Virus record (IMG/VR): IMGVR_UViG_3300044632_001003
Location: 141,010-205,009 of that record
Strand: one strand, 5' to 3'
Length of the DNA: 64,000 bases
A model generated the notes under the pieces. The model was not told the origin of the DNA. It ran no database searches and saw only the letters and a program-made list of their open reading frames with translations. The position numbers and the translations under genes are program-made. Positions 17,592-59,610 of the stretch are shown here, one piece after another. Position 1 is the first letter of the stretch. Each line of letters starts with the position of its first letter.

Positions 17592-17963
17592 CTACGAAGC
17601 ATTATTTCTTCTTGGTCTGTATTTAAACAGATTAAGAGGAGGGTCTGGTTTCATCCATTCTTCTATTTTATTAAATCTTTCTTCACTATAAAAGTCTTGC
17701 TGAACAAACCATAATTTCCAGTGCTCATGTCCCTTCGACTGGTTACAATCATGACAGCAACAGACTACGTTTTTTGTAAAGTCTGCTCCACCTTTTGATT
17801 GAGGGATAATGTGATCAATTGTGAGTCTCTCCTCCGACCCACAATAAGCACATTGATGATTCCACTGTTCTTTTATATGTTGCCTCCACATTCGTTTCGC
17901 CTCCCCAGAACTTGTTGCGTGTAACTGAAACAAGTATTCTTTTGGAGAGTGTAGAGGTCCCAT
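17592..17963 (-). CDS. HNH endonuclease
   Basis: CAYCG...LTIDHIIPQSKGG...NVVCCCHDCNQSKG. Confidence 0.9.
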   Translation of the reverse strand: MGPLHSPKEYLFQLHATSSGEAKRMWRQHIKEQWNHQCAYCGSEERLTIDHIIPQSKGGADFTKNVVCCCHDCNQSKGHEHWKLWFVQQDFYSEERFNKIEEWMKPDPPLNLFKYRPRRNNAS

Positions 17964-31020: not shown

Positions 31021-31079
31021 AATACTAAAAAACTCTGCTGCTTATTTAGCAACAGAGTTAAATATTATGAAGTCTTATA

Positions 31080-48089: not shown

Positions 48090-48165
48090 TCGGAGTATTC
48101 GGATTTGAACCGAAATTATTCCGCTTCCCAAAAGCGGTGCCATGACCAAGTTAGGCGATACTCCG
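48090..48165 (-). tRNA. tRNA-Pro(TGG), atypical D-arm
   Basis: Acceptor stem CGGAGTA/TACTCCG; anticodon arm CCGCT-TTTGGGA-AGCGG; GGTTCAAATCC. Confidence 0.8.
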
Positions 48166-48507
48166 TAGTTCCAACTCACCAGAATGAACTGCTGCGTGGC
48201 AACAAGCACATAATAGCACACATTCCTTTATTTCGTCAATAATACGTTCGTGACTCCATCCACGAATCCCATGAAATTTAGCGTCTTTTTGAGATGGATC
48301 TAAATGATGAACTTGAAGTGCTGATGAATATTTATCATAACCACAAGAAACACACTTACCTCCCATTTCTTCAAGAATAAAATTTCTTTTTTTCTGTCCC
48401 AACTCTAATGTATATTTGTTATGACAAGCACCACAAACACTTTTTTTATGCCCATAAAACTTAGATGGATCAGTTTCTCCACAATGCCCACACTTATGCG
48501 TTCTCAT
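48151..48507 (-). CDS. HNH homing endonuclease
   Basis: N-terminal CxxC...CxxC; GGKCVSCGY...LQVHHLDP...LLCACCH. Confidence 0.85.
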   Translation of the reverse strand: MRTHKCGHCGETDPSKFYGHKKSVCGACHNKYTLELGQKKRNFILEEMGGKCVSCGYDKYSSALQVHHLDPSQKDAKFHGIRGWSHERIIDEIKECVLLCACCHAAVHSGELELRSIA

Positions 48508-48533
48508 TTTCGGTAGAATAAGTTTATCTACCG

Positions 48534-48683
48534 TTATTTATGTTTTTTATCAAATGGAGCCCAGTGCTGCCATTCGTATTTGTGTATTGCCCAGATACCC
48601 ATAATAGGAAGCACAATCAAAATGTATCCAAGAAATCCAAGAGTATAGGGGTTTTCTAGAACCCATCGAGCAAAATGTCCCAT
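48534..48683 (-). CDS. Small membrane protein (49 aa)
   Basis: MGHFARWVLENPYTLGFLGYILIVLPIMGIWAIHKYEWQHWAPF... Confidence 0.6.
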   Translation of the reverse strand: MGHFARWVLENPYTLGFLGYILIVLPIMGIWAIHKYEWQHWAPFDKKHK

Positions 48684-52521: not shown

Positions 52522-53082
52522 TTATTCTGGAATTACTTCTTCAATTGGTTCTTCGACTGACTCAGTTTGTACAGGTGCTTGTTGAGGAACTTCTACTTCT
52601 ACTTGGATATCTTCTAGTGCCGCAGATGCCGATCTGGCAGTCTCTGAGATAGACCTCAACATCCACACATATTTGCCATGAGACTCCATTAAGTCCTGAA
52701 GAATATTTGCTGTAGCAAGACTCTCAATTCTTTCAGCAGAATTGGAAGCATCAATTAGCATATCAATAAGTGTTTGATTATCACCAAGAAGTTGCTTCAC
52801 CATCATCTTAGCGTTGATTCCCTGAGCACTATTTGATGCTTGTTCAATATGAGTGACTTCAGTGATTCTAGTTAGTGTGCTCACTGGTTTCATACCAAGA
52901 AATCTCATATGTTCAGTCAGACGATCGATCTCTTCAAACATTGCAGTATATTGCTCACCGAAGAGAGTATGTAGTTGGTGAAAATCAGGTCCTACAACAT
53001 TCCAATGATAAATCCATGTCTTATGAAACAAGACAAACAAAGATGCCTGAATATCACTCAATTGTTTGAAAAGTTTTTCCAT
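52522..53082 (-). CDS. dps: Dps (DNA-binding ferritin-like) protein
   Basis: HWNVVGPDF..LH.LF.EQY...ID...E ferroxidase motif; K..WML. Confidence 0.92.
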   Translation of the reverse strand: MEKLFKQLSDIQASLFVLFHKTWIYHWNVVGPDFHQLHTLFGEQYTAMFEEIDRLTEHMRFLGMKPVSTLTRITEVTHIEQASNSAQGINAKMMVKQLLGDNQTLIDMLIDASNSAERIESLATANILQDLMESHGKYVWMLRSISETARSASAALEDIQVEVEVPQQAPVQTESVEEPIEEVIPE

Positions 53083-53100
53083 TATACTTCTTTTTTGAAG

Positions 53101-53108
53101 TATTTATA
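53101..53108 (-). promoter_or_regulatory. Late promoter TATAAATA upstream of dps
   Basis: Exact match 18 nt upstream of the ATG. Confidence 0.7.
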
Positions 53109-57581: not shown

Positions 57582-58119
57582 CTAAAGAAATTCTTTTACC
57601 ACTTTTTAATCGACGTACTCTATGTATTATATCTGAAGGGAATATGATTACGTCACCAACATCCATTGAAATTGTTTTCATATTTCTCGGACCAGACATG
57701 AGTTGAAATTCTCCACCTTCATAGTCATCCTTTGATGATAAGCAAAGAGATATGCTTAGTTTTCTTATTATACCAGGATTGTACTGTTCAGTAGTAAAAT
57801 CACTGTGCCAAGCATAATGAGAACCTTTTCCCTCATAGACTGTAAATTGAATTTGATCGTGCCAAGATGTTAAATCATAATTAAAAAGATTTAAGTTTGC
57901 ACAGTTAATAAAGTGTGCCATCATACCAGCAACCCAATGGTCTGTTGGTATCCAAAAATTTTTACTTTTTCTTATATCAGAGTCAATGGCAGATTGAGAA
58001 TCTTGAAGTCTAATCGTTGAGGATGTTAAAGATTCTTGTCCAAATTCTTTTTGTATTAGACTACAAAATTCTTTTTTAATGCCAGAAGGAATATAGTAAT
58101 AATTATTGTATATGCTCAT
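57550..58119 (-). CDS. PKHD-type 2OG-Fe(II) oxygenase
   Basis: Y.WHSD, RKLS, YEGGEF, FPS...HRV, R.SLVGW. Confidence 0.88.
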   Translation of the reverse strand: MSIYNNYYYIPSGIKKEFCSLIQKEFGQESLTSSTIRLQDSQSAIDSDIRKSKNFWIPTDHWVAGMMAHFINCANLNLFNYDLTSWHDQIQFTVYEGKGSHYAWHSDFTTEQYNPGIIRKLSISLCLSSKDDYEGGEFQLMSGPRNMKTISMDVGDVIIFPSDIIHRVRRLKSGKRISLVGWYGGPAFR

Positions 58120-58136
58120 TTTTACTACTTCGTAAG

Positions 58137-58208
58137 AGCGGAGTATCGGAATCGAACCGACGACATCTAACTTGGAAGGATAGCGTTCTACCGCTGAACT
58201 AACTCCGC
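58137..58208 (-). tRNA. tRNA-Gly(TCC)
   Basis: GCGGAGT/ACTCCGC; loop CTTCCAA; GGTTCGATTCC. Confidence 0.9.
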
Positions 58209-58210
58209 AA

Positions 58211-58287
58211 TGGTGGGGATTTACCCAGCCTCAGAGTTTCCTCTTCACAGGCACGGAACCCCAGCGCATCTTCGCTTCACACGGACT
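58211..58287 (-). ncRNA. Unannotated kink-turn-containing small RNA ending in CCA
   Basis: GCC-UGU-GA-AGAG-GAAA-CUCU-GA-GGC; outer GGGG/CCCC stem; starts at the predicted TSS of a perfect promoter. Confidence 0.55.
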
Positions 58288-58292
58288 AAAAT

Positions 58293-58321
58293 ATTATAAA
58301 GCATAATGAGTATTATGTCAA
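58293..58321 (-). promoter_or_regulatory. Perfect sigma70 promoter
   Basis: TTGACA(58316-21)-17-TATAAT(58293-98). Confidence 0.85.
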
Positions 58322-58767
58322 GCCCTTTTTTTATTTCCCCAAGTATCTGTCTGAGAGTGGCAATTTGGACATAAAAATCTTAAATTTTCTACTCGGTTGT
58401 CGTTATTTACACCATTAATATGGTCTATTTGTAGTGATATTGGATTTCCCATCCATTCAGATATACCACACTTTAAACATTCATACTTTAATATATCATC
58501 TTTCAATATTCTCTTTTTTAAATCTTTTCTATCATAAGTAGAAAATTCGCAAAAAATTTCAGAGTGAGTTTTCTTTTTGGTGCTTTTACCACCCTTCCTA
58601 AAAATAGGAAGTTTAATTCCTCTATTATCAAGGTCTTTTTTTACAATATCATAAGTAGTTCCGCTTTTATTAGTATATCCAAGTTTTTTACAAAACTGCC
58701 AAAAAGAAGAACTTTCTAAAAGAAAAGATTTTATTTCCTCATCAGAATATAAATTTTTAATAGACAT
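58318..58767 (-). CDS. HNH homing endonuclease in the tRNA cluster
   Basis: C..CGI.EW.G..I.LQIDHING...DNR.ENLRFLCPNCHSQT. Confidence 0.92.
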   Translation of the reverse strand: MSIKNLYSDEEIKSFLLESSSFWQFCKKLGYTNKSGTTYDIVKKDLDNRGIKLPIFRKGGKSTKKKTHSEIFCEFSTYDRKDLKKRILKDDILKYECLKCGISEWMGNPISLQIDHINGVNNDNRVENLRFLCPNCHSQTDTWGNKKRA

Positions 58768-58827
58768 ATAAAAAGTTTATCTATTAGTATTTATACACTT
58801 CCTTATTTAGGAAGTGTATATTGTAAG

Positions 58828-58900
58828 AGCCCCCGACAAGACTTGAACTTGCGACATCGGCTTTACAAAAGCCGCGCTCTACCAGCTGAGCTACAAGGGC
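58828..58900 (-). tRNA. tRNA-Thr(TGT)
   Basis: CGGCT-TTTGTAA-AGCCG; GTTCAAGT T-loop. Confidence 0.92.
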
Positions 58901-58990
58901 GAAACAGGGGAGGCCATCCCCCTGACCTAGAAATATTCTAGGTTTTAGTTGGAAGGAGTGCTCTTGAGGTTATCGCAGGATCACTTCCAA

Positions 58991-59062
58991 CTCCCCCTCC
59001 TGGATTCGAACCAGGGACCCTACGATTAACAGTCGTTTGCGCTACCGCTGCGCCAAGGGGGA
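58991..59062 (-). tRNA. tRNA-Asn(GTT)
   Basis: TCCCCCT/AGGGGGA; ACGA-CTGTTAA-TCGT. Confidence 0.92.
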
Positions 59063-59093
59063 ATACTAACGGGGGTGTTGCCACCCCACTATT

Positions 59094-59291
59094 TTATTTG
59101 GAACTTACAAAAGTATTGATTTTATCAGCAAGTGCTTCAACCTCTTCATATGTAGGAAACTCTGGATAATCCATTTTTACATTTCTATCCCTATTCCACA
59201 TTTCTGCAAGATTATAGTTTGCGTGAAACTCATCTTGCGCCTGACCGTAAGCTTGCTTAAAAATTTCAAAGCGCAGTTCGTAAGGTGTCAT
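59094..59291 (-). CDS. Cyanophage hypothetical protein
   Basis: MTPYELRFEIFKQA...YPEFPT...A.KIN.FVS; AAGGAG RBS; the ORF-track start lies inside tRNA-Leu and was moved. Confidence 0.7.
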   Translation of the reverse strand: MTPYELRFEIFKQAYGQAQDEFHANYNLAEMWNRDRNVKMDYPEFPTYEEVEALADKINTFVSSK

Positions 59292-59340
59292 TGTTTTACT
59301 CCTTGTGTGTTTGTGTGTGTATGGAGAATAAAATCTCCAA

Positions 59341-59420
59341 TGCCCGAGAGAGGACTCGAACCTCCACTCCGAAGAACATGATCCTAAGTCATGCGTGGCT
59401 ACCAATTACACCACTCGGGC
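59341..59420 (-). tRNA. tRNA-Leu(TAG)
   Basis: GCCCGAG/CTCGGGC; CATGA-CTTAGGA-TCATG; variable arm. Confidence 0.93.
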
Positions 59421-59497
<77 letters not shown>

Positions 59498-59581
59498 AAG
59501 AGACCTCCCATCTTTATCGACCCAGTGGGCAAGGAGGGGCAGGTCTTATACGGAGTTTGAACCCCCGCCGCCTATGAGACA

Positions 59582-59610
59582 ATCATACCAGATACGGTGC
59601 GAATCGTCAA
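59582..59610 (-). promoter_or_regulatory. Sigma70 promoter of the tRNA operon
   Basis: TTGACG-17-TATGAT with extended TGn. Confidence 0.8.

What the first reader, a model, noticed from the sequence alone, without database searches (positions are those of the whole stretch)
58758..58820. Late-promoter/hairpin translational switch on the tRNA-cluster HNH gene
Seen on the minus strand: TATAAATA-C-TAATAGATA-AACTTTTTATA-TGTCTATTA. The 9-bp stem (one G-U pair) covers most of the AUG, and the late promoter ends 1 nt before the 5' arm. Late transcripts would start inside the arm and could not fold it. A second perfect 12-bp inverted repeat (58792-58820) overlaps the promoter. Established: T4 uses this design for I-TevI, gene 49, e and soc. 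Inference: it keeps a toxic nuclease silent on early tRNA-operon read-through transcripts.
Basis: partly seen in the sequence, partly recalled or inferred. Interest (0 to 1): 0.62.

Follow-up and report, generated by a model that had tools for sequence, protein, structure and literature searches.

The report
Late-expression leader of a mobile HNH gene
A 505-bp mobile nuclease gene sits between two tRNA genes of a T4-like cyanophage and carries its own late promoter nested in two RNA hairpins, a design already known from phage T4, so this is a well-documented new example and not a new mechanism.

Summary
On the minus strand there is TATAAATA (58795-58788), a 9-bp stem (58786-58778 / 58766-58758) that buries the U and G of the AUG, and a perfect 12-bp hairpin (58820-58792).

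NATAAATA is a credible late promoter in this 205-kb cyanomyovirus. It is strand-biased (ATAAATA 2 on plus, 44 on minus). 27 of the 44 minus-strand copies lie 12-45 nt upstream of a start codon, often of a virion gene. A gp55 homologue is present.

Related phages have an empty site where tRNA-Thr abuts the sigma70 promoter of tRNA-Gly. The HNH gene and its whole 55-nt leader are therefore a 505-bp insert.

The switch reading is only partly supported:
- The AUG hairpin is weak (-4.7 kcal/mol, against -18.7 for T4 segB).
- There is no Shine-Dalgarno sequence to hide.
- The stem is broken in the 86%-identical relative.
- No transcription start site (TSS) data exist.

In its favour, the predicted late start falls inside the 5' arm. 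A second HNH gene (48151-48507) and about 18 variants of its leader keep the same box-hairpin-AUG layout.

The 12-bp hairpin is the element conserved across the family. It shows covariation and has a CTAAATA late box in its loop.

This is a new member of a known kind (T4 segB, I-TevI, Aeh1 mobE, marine metagenomic endonuclease genes).

The parts
58320..58824 (-). 505-bp mobile HNH cassette (leader plus ORF). The boundaries are ambiguous by 3 nt because CTT is repeated at both ends.
   Evidence: Empty sites in related IMG/VR contigs L030, L037, L042, L044 and L046 read GGGGGCTCTT|GACATAA. The distance from the tRNA-Thr 3' end to a downstream marker is 58-62 nt there and 567 nt here. BLAST breakpoints fall at about 58822 and 58322. 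Metatranscriptome contigs join 58260/58263 to 58828/58825.
58827..58900 (-). tRNA-Thr (UGU). The cassette starts 0-3 nt after its 3' end.
   Evidence: ARAGORN; Rfam tRNA, 63.8 bits.
58792..58820 (-). Hairpin 1: perfect 12-bp stem, loop AAATA, -15.3 kcal/mol at 37 C. It is conserved across the HNH-1 family.
   Evidence: Covariation on alignment A4: 4 of 11 pairs changed on both sides, 88% of cells paired, score 0.338 against 0.174 in shuffles (0 of 500), slid controls at most 0.14.
58804..58810 (-). CTAAATA late-box variant, made of the last 2 nt of the 5' arm plus the loop of hairpin 1.
   Evidence: CTAAATA occurs 22 times on minus and 4 on plus. About 13 copies lie 13-43 nt upstream of start codons. 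The same box sits in the loop of the homologous hairpin in L178, L189 and L208.
58788..58795 (-). TATAAATA late-promoter box, 20 nt upstream of the ATG. Its first 4 nt belong to the 3' arm of hairpin 1.
   Evidence: Similar boxes precede scaffold, sheath, baseplate and tail-fibre genes. A gp55 homologue is present.
58781..58783 (-). Predicted late transcription start, inside the 5' arm of hairpin 2. Not mapped.
   Evidence: Inferred from the T4 geometry, in which the box lies about one helical turn upstream of +1 (PMC2988020). Folds of RNAs starting here lose the hairpin.
58758..58786 (-). Hairpin 2: 9 bp with one G-U, 11-nt loop. It is -4.7 kcal/mol at 37 C and -7.8 at 20 C. Its 3' arm is U and G of the AUG plus codons 2-3.
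   Evidence: It is identical in the 100% and 98% relatives. The 86% relative L175 has two mismatches.
58318..58767 (-). HNH-1 ORF, 149 aa. Its TGA stop lies inside the backbone TTGACA.
   Evidence: Pfam HNH 5.5e-5; PHROG 10822 HNH endonuclease 1e-42; no cyanophage homologues among deposited phages.
58293..58321 (-). Perfect sigma70-type promoter (TTGACA-17-TATAAT) of the tRNA-Gly unit. It is backbone, not cassette.
   Evidence: 12 of 12 match. It is present directly after tRNA-Thr in the empty-site relatives.
59582..59610 (-). Sigma70-like promoter (TTGACG-17-TATGAT with TG) upstream of tRNA-Arg. It is the likely source of read-through into the cassette.
   Evidence: 10 of 12 match. No canonical terminator lies between it and 58826, apart from a weak one at 59087-59072. 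Read-through itself is inferred.
48511..48542 (-). Leader of the second HNH gene: CATAAATA (48542-48535), one A, then a 7-bp hairpin (48533-48527 / 48517-48511, loop 9 nt, -8.5 kcal/mol), then AAA and ATG.
   Evidence: It is the strongest box-adjacent hairpin among 44 late-box genes. It is conserved in 18 distinct leaders.
48151..48507 (-). HNH-2 ORF, 118 aa. Its last 15 nt overlap tRNA-Pro.
   Evidence: Empty sites and alternative HNH genes occupy the same tRNA-Pro site in relatives.

Best explanation
Window 58320-58824 (minus strand) is a free-standing HNH homing-endonuclease cassette. It is inserted exactly between tRNA-Thr and the sigma70 promoter of the tRNA-Gly unit of a T4-like cyanomyovirus. 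Its 55-nt leader is a self-contained late-expression module.

Shown:
- The insert boundaries.
- The two hairpins.
- Two late-box motifs: CTAAATA in the loop of hairpin 1, and TATAAATA at its 3' edge.
- The family-wide conservation of hairpin 1.
- The recurrence of the box-hairpin-AUG layout on other HNH genes.

Inferred mechanism:
- Transcripts entering from the upstream tRNA operon carry both hairpins. Hairpin 2 pairs the leader with the U and G of the AUG and with codons 2-3. This raises the cost of 30S binding on a message that has no Shine-Dalgarno sequence.
- Hairpin 1 descends from a hairpin that in relatives looks like a terminator, with the late box in its loop. It probably insulates or processes the read-through RNA.
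- gp55-directed late transcription from TATAAATA starts at about 58782, inside the 5' arm. The late mRNA then has a roughly 15-nt unstructured leader and is translated.
- The expected effect of hairpin 2 alone is modest: about 4-5 kcal/mol, far less than in T4 segB or e.
For: - Late promoter. ATAAATA occurs 2 times on plus and 44 on minus; TATAAATA 0 and 11. 27 of 44 copies lie 12-45 nt upstream of start codons, against about 1.7 expected. The genes they precede include head scaffold, tail sheath, baseplate wedge and hub, and tail fibres. A gp55 homologue has E = 1.3e-21. NATAAATA is the published cyanomyovirus late promoter (PMC2984593).
- Cassette. Empty sites and a 505-bp difference. The protein has a sporadic distribution.
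- Folding. Both hairpins are in the MFE. Opening energy for -12..+12 is 6.0 kcal/mol in read-through RNA and 1.3-2.5 in late RNA at 37 C, or 8.9 and 3.6 at 20 C.
- Recurrence. The HNH-2 family keeps box-hairpin-AUG in 18 distinct leaders. It shows 1 change over 12 stem columns against 16 over 9 loop columns, while 87% of third codon positions vary. Diverged HNH genes in L070, L081 and L084 have different stems in the same layout. HNH-1 relatives L178, L189, L184 and L208 put the box inside a hairpin next to the start codon.
- Hairpin 1 covaries.
- T4 segB, in T4's own tRNA cluster, has the same layout (PMC2988022).
Against: - Hairpin 2 is weak: -4.7 kcal/mol against -18.7 for T4 segB. The difference in opening energy between read-through and late RNA is about 4 kcal/mol, against about 10 in T4.
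- 4% of control genes have an equally good stem at the equivalent position.
- In the 86%-identical relative the 5' arm has two mismatches and the MFE lacks the stem. L188 has only 9 nt between the box and the ATG.
- No Shine-Dalgarno sequence exists here.
- A late start from the CTAAATA box (about 58798) would retain hairpin 2.
- No TSS, no strand-specific RNA and no evidence of early read-through. The only RNA data were metatranscriptome contigs with about zero depth over the ORF.
- In L070 and L081 the late box doubles as the -10 of a TTGACA-17 promoter, so there early and late RNAs would start alike.
Confidence: 0.5

Rival explanations
1. Control is by transcription only. The HNH gene is late simply because it has its own late promoter or promoters. 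Hairpin 2 is an incidental AU-rich stem of this lineage with no regulatory effect.
For: Hairpin 2 is marginal by itself (4% of controls). It is weak and absent from the 86% and 58% relatives, which keep the box. HNH-3 (17592-17963) has a late box and no AUG hairpin.
Against: The 5' arm starts 1 nt after the box and the 3' arm covers the AUG. The same geometry is under clear purifying selection in the HNH-2 family. The two leaders share an exact 11-mer at the same offset from the box. On SD-less messages, local structure at the AUG is expected to matter (own knowledge).
Confidence: 0.22
2. Hairpin 1 is the working element. It stops, pauses or marks for cleavage the RNA coming from the tRNA operon. 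The late boxes nested in it restart transcription without the 5' arm. Hairpin 2 is secondary.
For: Hairpin 1 is the element conserved from 46% to 98% protein identity, with compensatory changes. In L178, L189 and L208 it ends in a U-run 4-6 nt from the start codon, with CTAAATA in the loop. A look-alike with a U-run sits at 31031-31059, at the junction between a peroxiredoxin-like gene and a small ORF followed by a tail-fibre gene. Hairpins that enclose a late box are enriched: 3 of 44 against 0.7% (p = 0.003).
Against: In this window the stem is followed by AAUACUAAU, not a U-run. The terminator scan does not list it. It ends 24 nt before the AUG, so it cannot occlude initiation.
Confidence: 0.2
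3. The 12-bp palindrome is a DNA operator overlapping the late promoter. It would be bound by a dimeric repressor or by the endonuclease itself, as in I-TevI autorepression.
For: It overlaps the TATAAATA box by 4 nt. [quoted passage not shown] Symmetric changes in a palindrome would also look like covariation.
Against: L175 keeps the pairing through two G-U pairs, which fits RNA and not a DNA palindrome. By eye, the best match between the leader and the empty-site sequence is 8 of 9 nt, about what chance gives. Monomeric HNH enzymes are not expected to need a perfect dyad.
Confidence: 0.05

Closest known systems
T4 segB (GIY-YIG homing endonuclease in the T4 tRNA gene cluster)
   Same: It is a free-standing endonuclease gene wedged between tRNA genes, starting about 40 nt after a tRNA 3' end. 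A late-box variant (CATAAATA) sits in the 5' arm of a hairpin whose 3' arm holds the start codon. The predicted late start lies inside the hairpin (PMC2988022).
   Different: segB belongs to another nuclease family. Its hairpin is about four times more stable (-18.7 against -4.7 kcal/mol) and sequesters a consensus Shine-Dalgarno sequence. Here there is no Shine-Dalgarno sequence, the box lies 1 nt upstream of the arm and not within it, and a second, stronger hairpin carrying another late box lies upstream.
I-TevI / I-TevII / I-TevIII and Aeh1 mobE; T4 late genes e, soc, 49
   Same: The logic is the same. The gene is embedded in an earlier transcription unit. The hairpin forms only on long transcripts. 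The late promoter is placed so that late RNA lacks part of the hairpin (PMC2988022). For T4 e the computed opening energies are 16.0 (long) and 2.75-6.5 (late) kcal/mol.
   Different: Those structures are described as very stable and hide the ribosome-binding site. TSSs and effects were shown experimentally. Here everything beyond the sequence is predicted.
5'-UTR hairpins with TATAAATA on free-standing endonuclease genes in marine metagenomes (Dassa et al. 2009, PMC2677866)
   Same: 15 of 16 endonuclease 5' UTRs had hairpins upstream of the start codon and 10 included the TATAAATA element. The endonuclease ORFs overlap the downstream gene, as HNH-1 and HNH-2 do here.
   Different: Those are GIY-YIG or Vsr-like genes that fracture protein-coding genes. 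Here HNH genes sit at tRNA flanks. Exact empty sites are available here, and so is family-wide covariation of the hairpin.

Membership tests
T4-type late-promoter / start-site-hairpin translational switch | A gp55-type late promoter (TATAAATA class) lies immediately upstream of the gene. | tested here: met
   The box is 20 nt from the ATG. The motif class is strand- and position-specific genome-wide and precedes virion genes. gp55 is present.
T4-type late-promoter / start-site-hairpin translational switch | A hairpin on long transcripts sequesters the ribosome-binding site and/or the start codon. | tested here: inconclusive
   The U and G of the AUG, codons 2-3 and 9 nt of the leader are paired. 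There is no Shine-Dalgarno sequence to sequester. The stem is only -4.7 kcal/mol, against -18.7 for T4 segB.
T4-type late-promoter / start-site-hairpin translational switch | The late transcription start lies inside the hairpin, so late RNA cannot fold it. | not testable with these tools
   By T4 spacing the start is predicted at 58781-58783, leaving 4-5 of 9 arm bases. No raw-read RNA data were available.
T4-type late-promoter / start-site-hairpin translational switch | The gene is crossed by early or middle read-through transcripts. | tested here: inconclusive
   A sigma70-like promoter lies at 59610-59582 and there is no canonical terminator before the cassette. No RNA evidence exists.
T4-type late-promoter / start-site-hairpin translational switch | The regulatory stem is kept among relatives. 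| tested here: inconclusive
   Hairpin 2 is identical in the 98-100% relatives and broken in the 86% relative. Hairpin 1 covaries. The analogous HNH-2 hairpin is strongly conserved.
Free-standing homing endonuclease gene | It carries a nuclease domain of a homing-endonuclease family. | tested here: met
   Pfam HNH above the cut-off; PHROG 10822 at 1e-42.
Free-standing homing endonuclease gene | Presence or absence at one exact site among related genomes, and a sporadic distribution. | tested here: met
   Empty sites occur in at least 5 related contigs whose neighbouring DNA is 75-96% identical. The nearest deposited-phage homologues are in Pseudomonas, Rhodococcus and Enterococcus phages.
Free-standing homing endonuclease gene | It cleaves the empty allele and is preferentially inherited in mixed infection. 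| not testable with these tools
   This needs purified protein or co-infection crosses.
Intrinsic terminator (for hairpin 1) | A stable stem immediately followed by a U-run. | tested here: not met
   The stem is -15.3 kcal/mol but is followed by AAUACUAAU, and the terminator scan does not list it. The homologous stems in L178, L189 and L208 do end in U-runs.

The most novel reading that the evidence does not exclude
A short portable palindrome with the late-promoter box in its loop travels with unrelated HNH endonuclease families in freshwater cyanomyoviruses and serves two roles. As DNA, the loop is the late promoter. As RNA on read-through transcripts, the stem stops transcription or blocks initiation on messages that have no Shine-Dalgarno sequence. 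In this phage it has been doubled into a nested two-hairpin, two-box leader, and part of it (TAGATAAACTT) has been exchanged between two endonuclease genes of the same genome.
Probability: 0.3. Interest if true: 0.5.

Novelty: new member of a known kind. Interest (0 to 1): 0.33.

Why it matters
It extends the T4 rule that selfish endonuclease genes carry their own late promoter and a hairpin that forms only on read-through transcripts. The rule now reaches freshwater T4-like cyanophages, where most genes lack a Shine-Dalgarno sequence. It comes with exact empty sites, which define what the mobile unit carries. It gives a small testable system: a 55-nt leader with two hairpins and two late boxes. 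That system can address how cyanophage late promoters are positioned relative to their transcripts, and how weak a start-codon structure can be and still gate translation. It does not reveal a new mechanism.

Tried and rejected
- RNA evidence. Only two metatranscriptome runs held parts of the stretch, and only as assembled contigs. They cover the tRNAs, show about zero depth on the HNH ORF and cannot show starts or strand. Their only use was to reveal joints like the empty site.
- Covariation of hairpin 2 from close copies. Nine IMG/VR copies are 100% identical over 171 nt, so they carry no information.
- Neighbour-gene relatives L026-L028 have no tRNA genes upstream and gave no empty site.
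- Rfam finds nothing but tRNAs in 58000-59600.
- The PDB sequence search for HNH-1 was blank.
- The wide metagenome scan returned mostly unrelated phages. Only 7 of 53 assessable start codons had an NTAAATA box within 60 nt, and only L208 was informative.
- Operator idea. By eye, the best leader-to-homing-site match (AATACTAAT against AATACTCAT) is about what chance gives. I did not pursue it.
- A sigma70 reading of TATAAATA as a -10 element in this window. The hexamer 17 nt upstream (TACACT) matches TTGACA at only 3 of 6 positions, and the scan does not list it.

Full report
**Setting**

The window is the last 64 kb of a single-contig viral genome of 205,009 bp and 38% G+C. About 237 of 267 simple ORF calls lie on the minus strand. 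The tRNA genes match those of Synechococcus and other cyanophage myoviruses. The genome has psbA, 2OG-Fe(II) oxygenases, T4-type sheath, baseplate and scaffold genes, and a homologue of the T4 late sigma factor gp55 (37% identity, E = 1.3e-21). It is a T4-like cyanomyovirus. Identical pieces occur in many IMG/VR contigs.

**Observation**

- TATAAATA is at 58795-58788, followed by one C.
- The 5' arm is at 58786-78, the 11-nt loop at 58777-67 and the 3' arm at 58766-58. The stem has 9 pairs, one of them G-U. The A of the ATG is the last loop base.
- The perfect 12-bp inverted repeat runs from 58820 to 58792 with a 5-nt loop and overlaps the box by 4 nt.

Both hairpins appear in the MFE and centroid fold (z = -5.7). 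Hairpin 1 is one of only two perfect stems of 12 bp or more in the genome, against 0.2 expected. Hairpin 2 alone is marginal. It scores -4.7 kcal/mol, and 4% of control genes do as well at an equivalent position.

**Is the box a late promoter?**

A plain count in the window says nothing (5 found, 4.96 expected). Genome-wide the picture is clear.
- TATAAATA occurs 0 times on plus and 11 on minus. ATAAATA occurs 2 and 44 times, CTAAATA 4 and 22.
- 27 of the 44 minus-strand ATAAATA copies lie 12-45 nt upstream of a called start codon. About 4% of positions would do so by chance.
- The genes they precede include head scaffold, tail sheath, two baseplate wedge subunits, baseplate hub, tail fibres and psbA.
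- This is the NATAAATA late promoter described for cyanomyoviruses (PMC2984593).

T4 late boxes lie about one helical turn upstream of +1 (PMC2988020). With the usual T4 spacing (my own knowledge: the box occupies -13 to -6), the start falls at about 58782, the fifth base of the 9-nt arm.

**What the locus is**

Related IMG/VR contigs show an empty site. There the tRNA-Thr 3' end runs straight into the perfect TTGACA-17-TATAAT promoter of the tRNA-Gly unit (GGGGGCTCTT|GACATAA). These are L030, L037, L042, L044 and L046, with analogous junctions behind a variant tRNA in L034 and L047. The window has 505 extra bases, 58824-58320, with boundaries ambiguous by 3 nt. Two metatranscriptome contigs show the same joint.

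The insert holds both hairpins, both boxes and the whole HNH ORF. The ORF's TGA stop lies inside the backbone -35 hexamer.

The protein is an HNH endonuclease. It has no cyanophage homologues among deposited phages, and its best hits are in Pseudomonas, Rhodococcus and Enterococcus phages. This is a free-standing homing-endonuclease cassette that brought its regulatory leader with it.

**Does the hairpin switch work on paper?**

Opening energy for -12..+12 around the AUG, in kcal/mol:

| RNA | Long (read-through) | Late |
|---|---|---|
| HNH-1, 37 C | 6.0 | 1.3-2.5 |
| HNH-1, 20 C | 8.9 | 3.6 |
| HNH-2 | 12.95 | 6.9 |
| T4 segB | 15.8 | 5.8 |
| T4 e | 16.0 | 2.75-6.5 |

The read-through RNA for HNH-1 starts at the tRNA-Thr end; the late RNA starts at 58781-58783. 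The T4 segB hairpin is -18.7 kcal/mol, against -4.7 for hairpin 2. The direction is therefore right but the size is modest.

There is no Shine-Dalgarno sequence to hide. Only 28% of genes, and 11% of late-box genes, have one. The target would be the AUG and its unstructured leader.

**Comparative evidence for hairpin 2**

The evidence within the HNH-1 family is mixed.
- Copies with 100% and 98% protein identity keep hairpin 2 unchanged.
- The 86% relative (L175-L177) keeps hairpin 1 and TATAAATA, but has two mismatches in the 5' arm of hairpin 2. Its fold lacks the stem.
- The 58% relative L188 has only 9 nt between the box and the ATG.

**Comparative evidence for the design**

This evidence is strong.
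- A second HNH gene (48151-48507) has CATAAATA, one A, a 7-bp hairpin, then AAA and ATG. It belongs to another PHROG family, and its last 15 nt overlap tRNA-Pro.
- That hairpin is the best box-adjacent hairpin among the 44 late-box genes.
- Across 39 loci and 18 distinct leaders at 74-100% protein identity, the 12 core stem columns show one change, and that change still gives a G-U pair. The 9 loop columns show 16 changes, and 87% of third codon positions vary. The outer pair switches between C-G and U-A.
- More distant HNH genes at the same tRNA-Pro site (L070, L081, L084) have other stem sequences in the same box-arm-loop-arm-ATG layout.
- The leaders of HNH-1 and HNH-2 share the exact 11-mer TAGATAAACTT at the same offset from the box. 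These are its only two exact copies in the window.
- A third HNH gene (17592-17963) lies in front of a tail-fibre gene. It has a late box and no AUG hairpin.

**Hairpin 1**

Hairpin 1 is the conserved element of the HNH-1 family. On seven leaders spanning 46-98% protein identity:
- 88% of cells are paired.
- 4 of 11 pairs changed on both sides.
- The covariation score is 0.338, against 0.174 in shuffles (0 of 500) and at most 0.14 when the partners are slid.

In L178, L189 and L208 the homologous stem has CTAAATA in its loop, ends in a U-run and sits 4-6 nt from the start codon. That is a terminator or occluder with the late promoter inside it.

The window keeps CTAAATA in the loop (58810-58804), but TATAAATA and about 24 further bases replace the U-run. 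A look-alike with a U-run sits at 31031-31059, between a peroxiredoxin-like gene and a small ORF followed by a tail-fibre gene. Hairpins that enclose a late box are mildly enriched (3 of 44 against 0.7%).

**Known relatives of the design**

[quoted passage not shown] It was also seen on endonuclease genes in marine metagenomes (PMC2677866). The same review notes that removing the I-TevI hairpin did not reduce phage viability. The 'toxic nuclease' motive is therefore unproven even in T4.

**Verdict**

This is a new member of a known kind. HNH-2 is the better test case.

Noticed in passing
window 58213-58265 (minus), within the spacer 58209-58290: A roughly 50-nt stretch between the sigma70 promoter and tRNA-Gly is 100% identical in 10 related contigs whose neighbouring genes are only 75-96% identical. 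It folds into a 16-pair hairpin (-21 kcal/mol), is followed by CCA and has no Rfam match. It is a candidate small stable RNA processed together with the tRNAs, like T4 rnaC and rnaD.
   Followed up: partly
window 48090-48542 and loci L053-L094: The site just upstream of tRNA-Pro is a hot spot. Many relatives are empty there, with a small membrane ORF carrying an embedded TTGACA-17-TATTAT promoter that abuts the tRNA. Others hold HNH-2 variants or a diverged HNH gene. All these ORFs end in ...RSIA plus a stop codon encoded by the first 15 nt of the tRNA itself.
   Followed up: partly
window 31031-31059 (minus): A 12-bp hairpin with loop AAATA has CTAAATA at its tip and is followed by a U-run, 10 nt before a 54-aa ORF. 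It lies between a peroxiredoxin-like gene and a collagen-like tail-fibre gene. It looks like a terminator and a late promoter in one palindrome.
   Followed up: partly
window 58773-58783 and 48520-48530 (minus): The exact 11-mer TAGATAAACTT occurs only twice in the window. Both copies lie 4 nt after the late box of an HNH gene, although the two proteins belong to different families.
   Followed up: partly
loci L070 and L081 (leaders of HNH genes at the tRNA-Pro site): There the late box TATAAATA lies 17 nt after a TTGACA. It could therefore also serve as the -10 of a sigma70 promoter, and early and late RNAs would start at the same place.
   Followed up: no
window 53082-53108 (minus): A Dps-like DNA-binding protein gene (52522-53082) directly follows tRNA-Val. 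It has TATAAATA 18 nt upstream of its ATG and a 7-bp hairpin running from the box into the purine-rich stretch before the ATG (-5.6 kcal/mol). This is the same layout on a gene that is not an endonuclease.
   Followed up: no
window 58282-58287; loci L178, L189, L208: The motif (G)TCCGTGTGAAG..GAAG sits at the predicted 5' end of the early tRNA-Gly transcript. It recurs just upstream of the HNH-1-family hairpin in distant relatives.
   Followed up: no
whole genome (G000): A Shine-Dalgarno-like motif occurs upstream of only 28% of minus-strand genes and 11% of late-box genes.
   Followed up: no
window 58901-58989 (minus): The 89-nt spacer between tRNA-Asn and tRNA-Thr holds three separate inverted repeats: 9 bp with a 28-nt gap (pair I3), 8 bp with a 3-nt loop (pair I6), and by eye a G+C-rich stem followed by GUUUC. 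Hairpins are common in this tRNA cluster.
   Followed up: no
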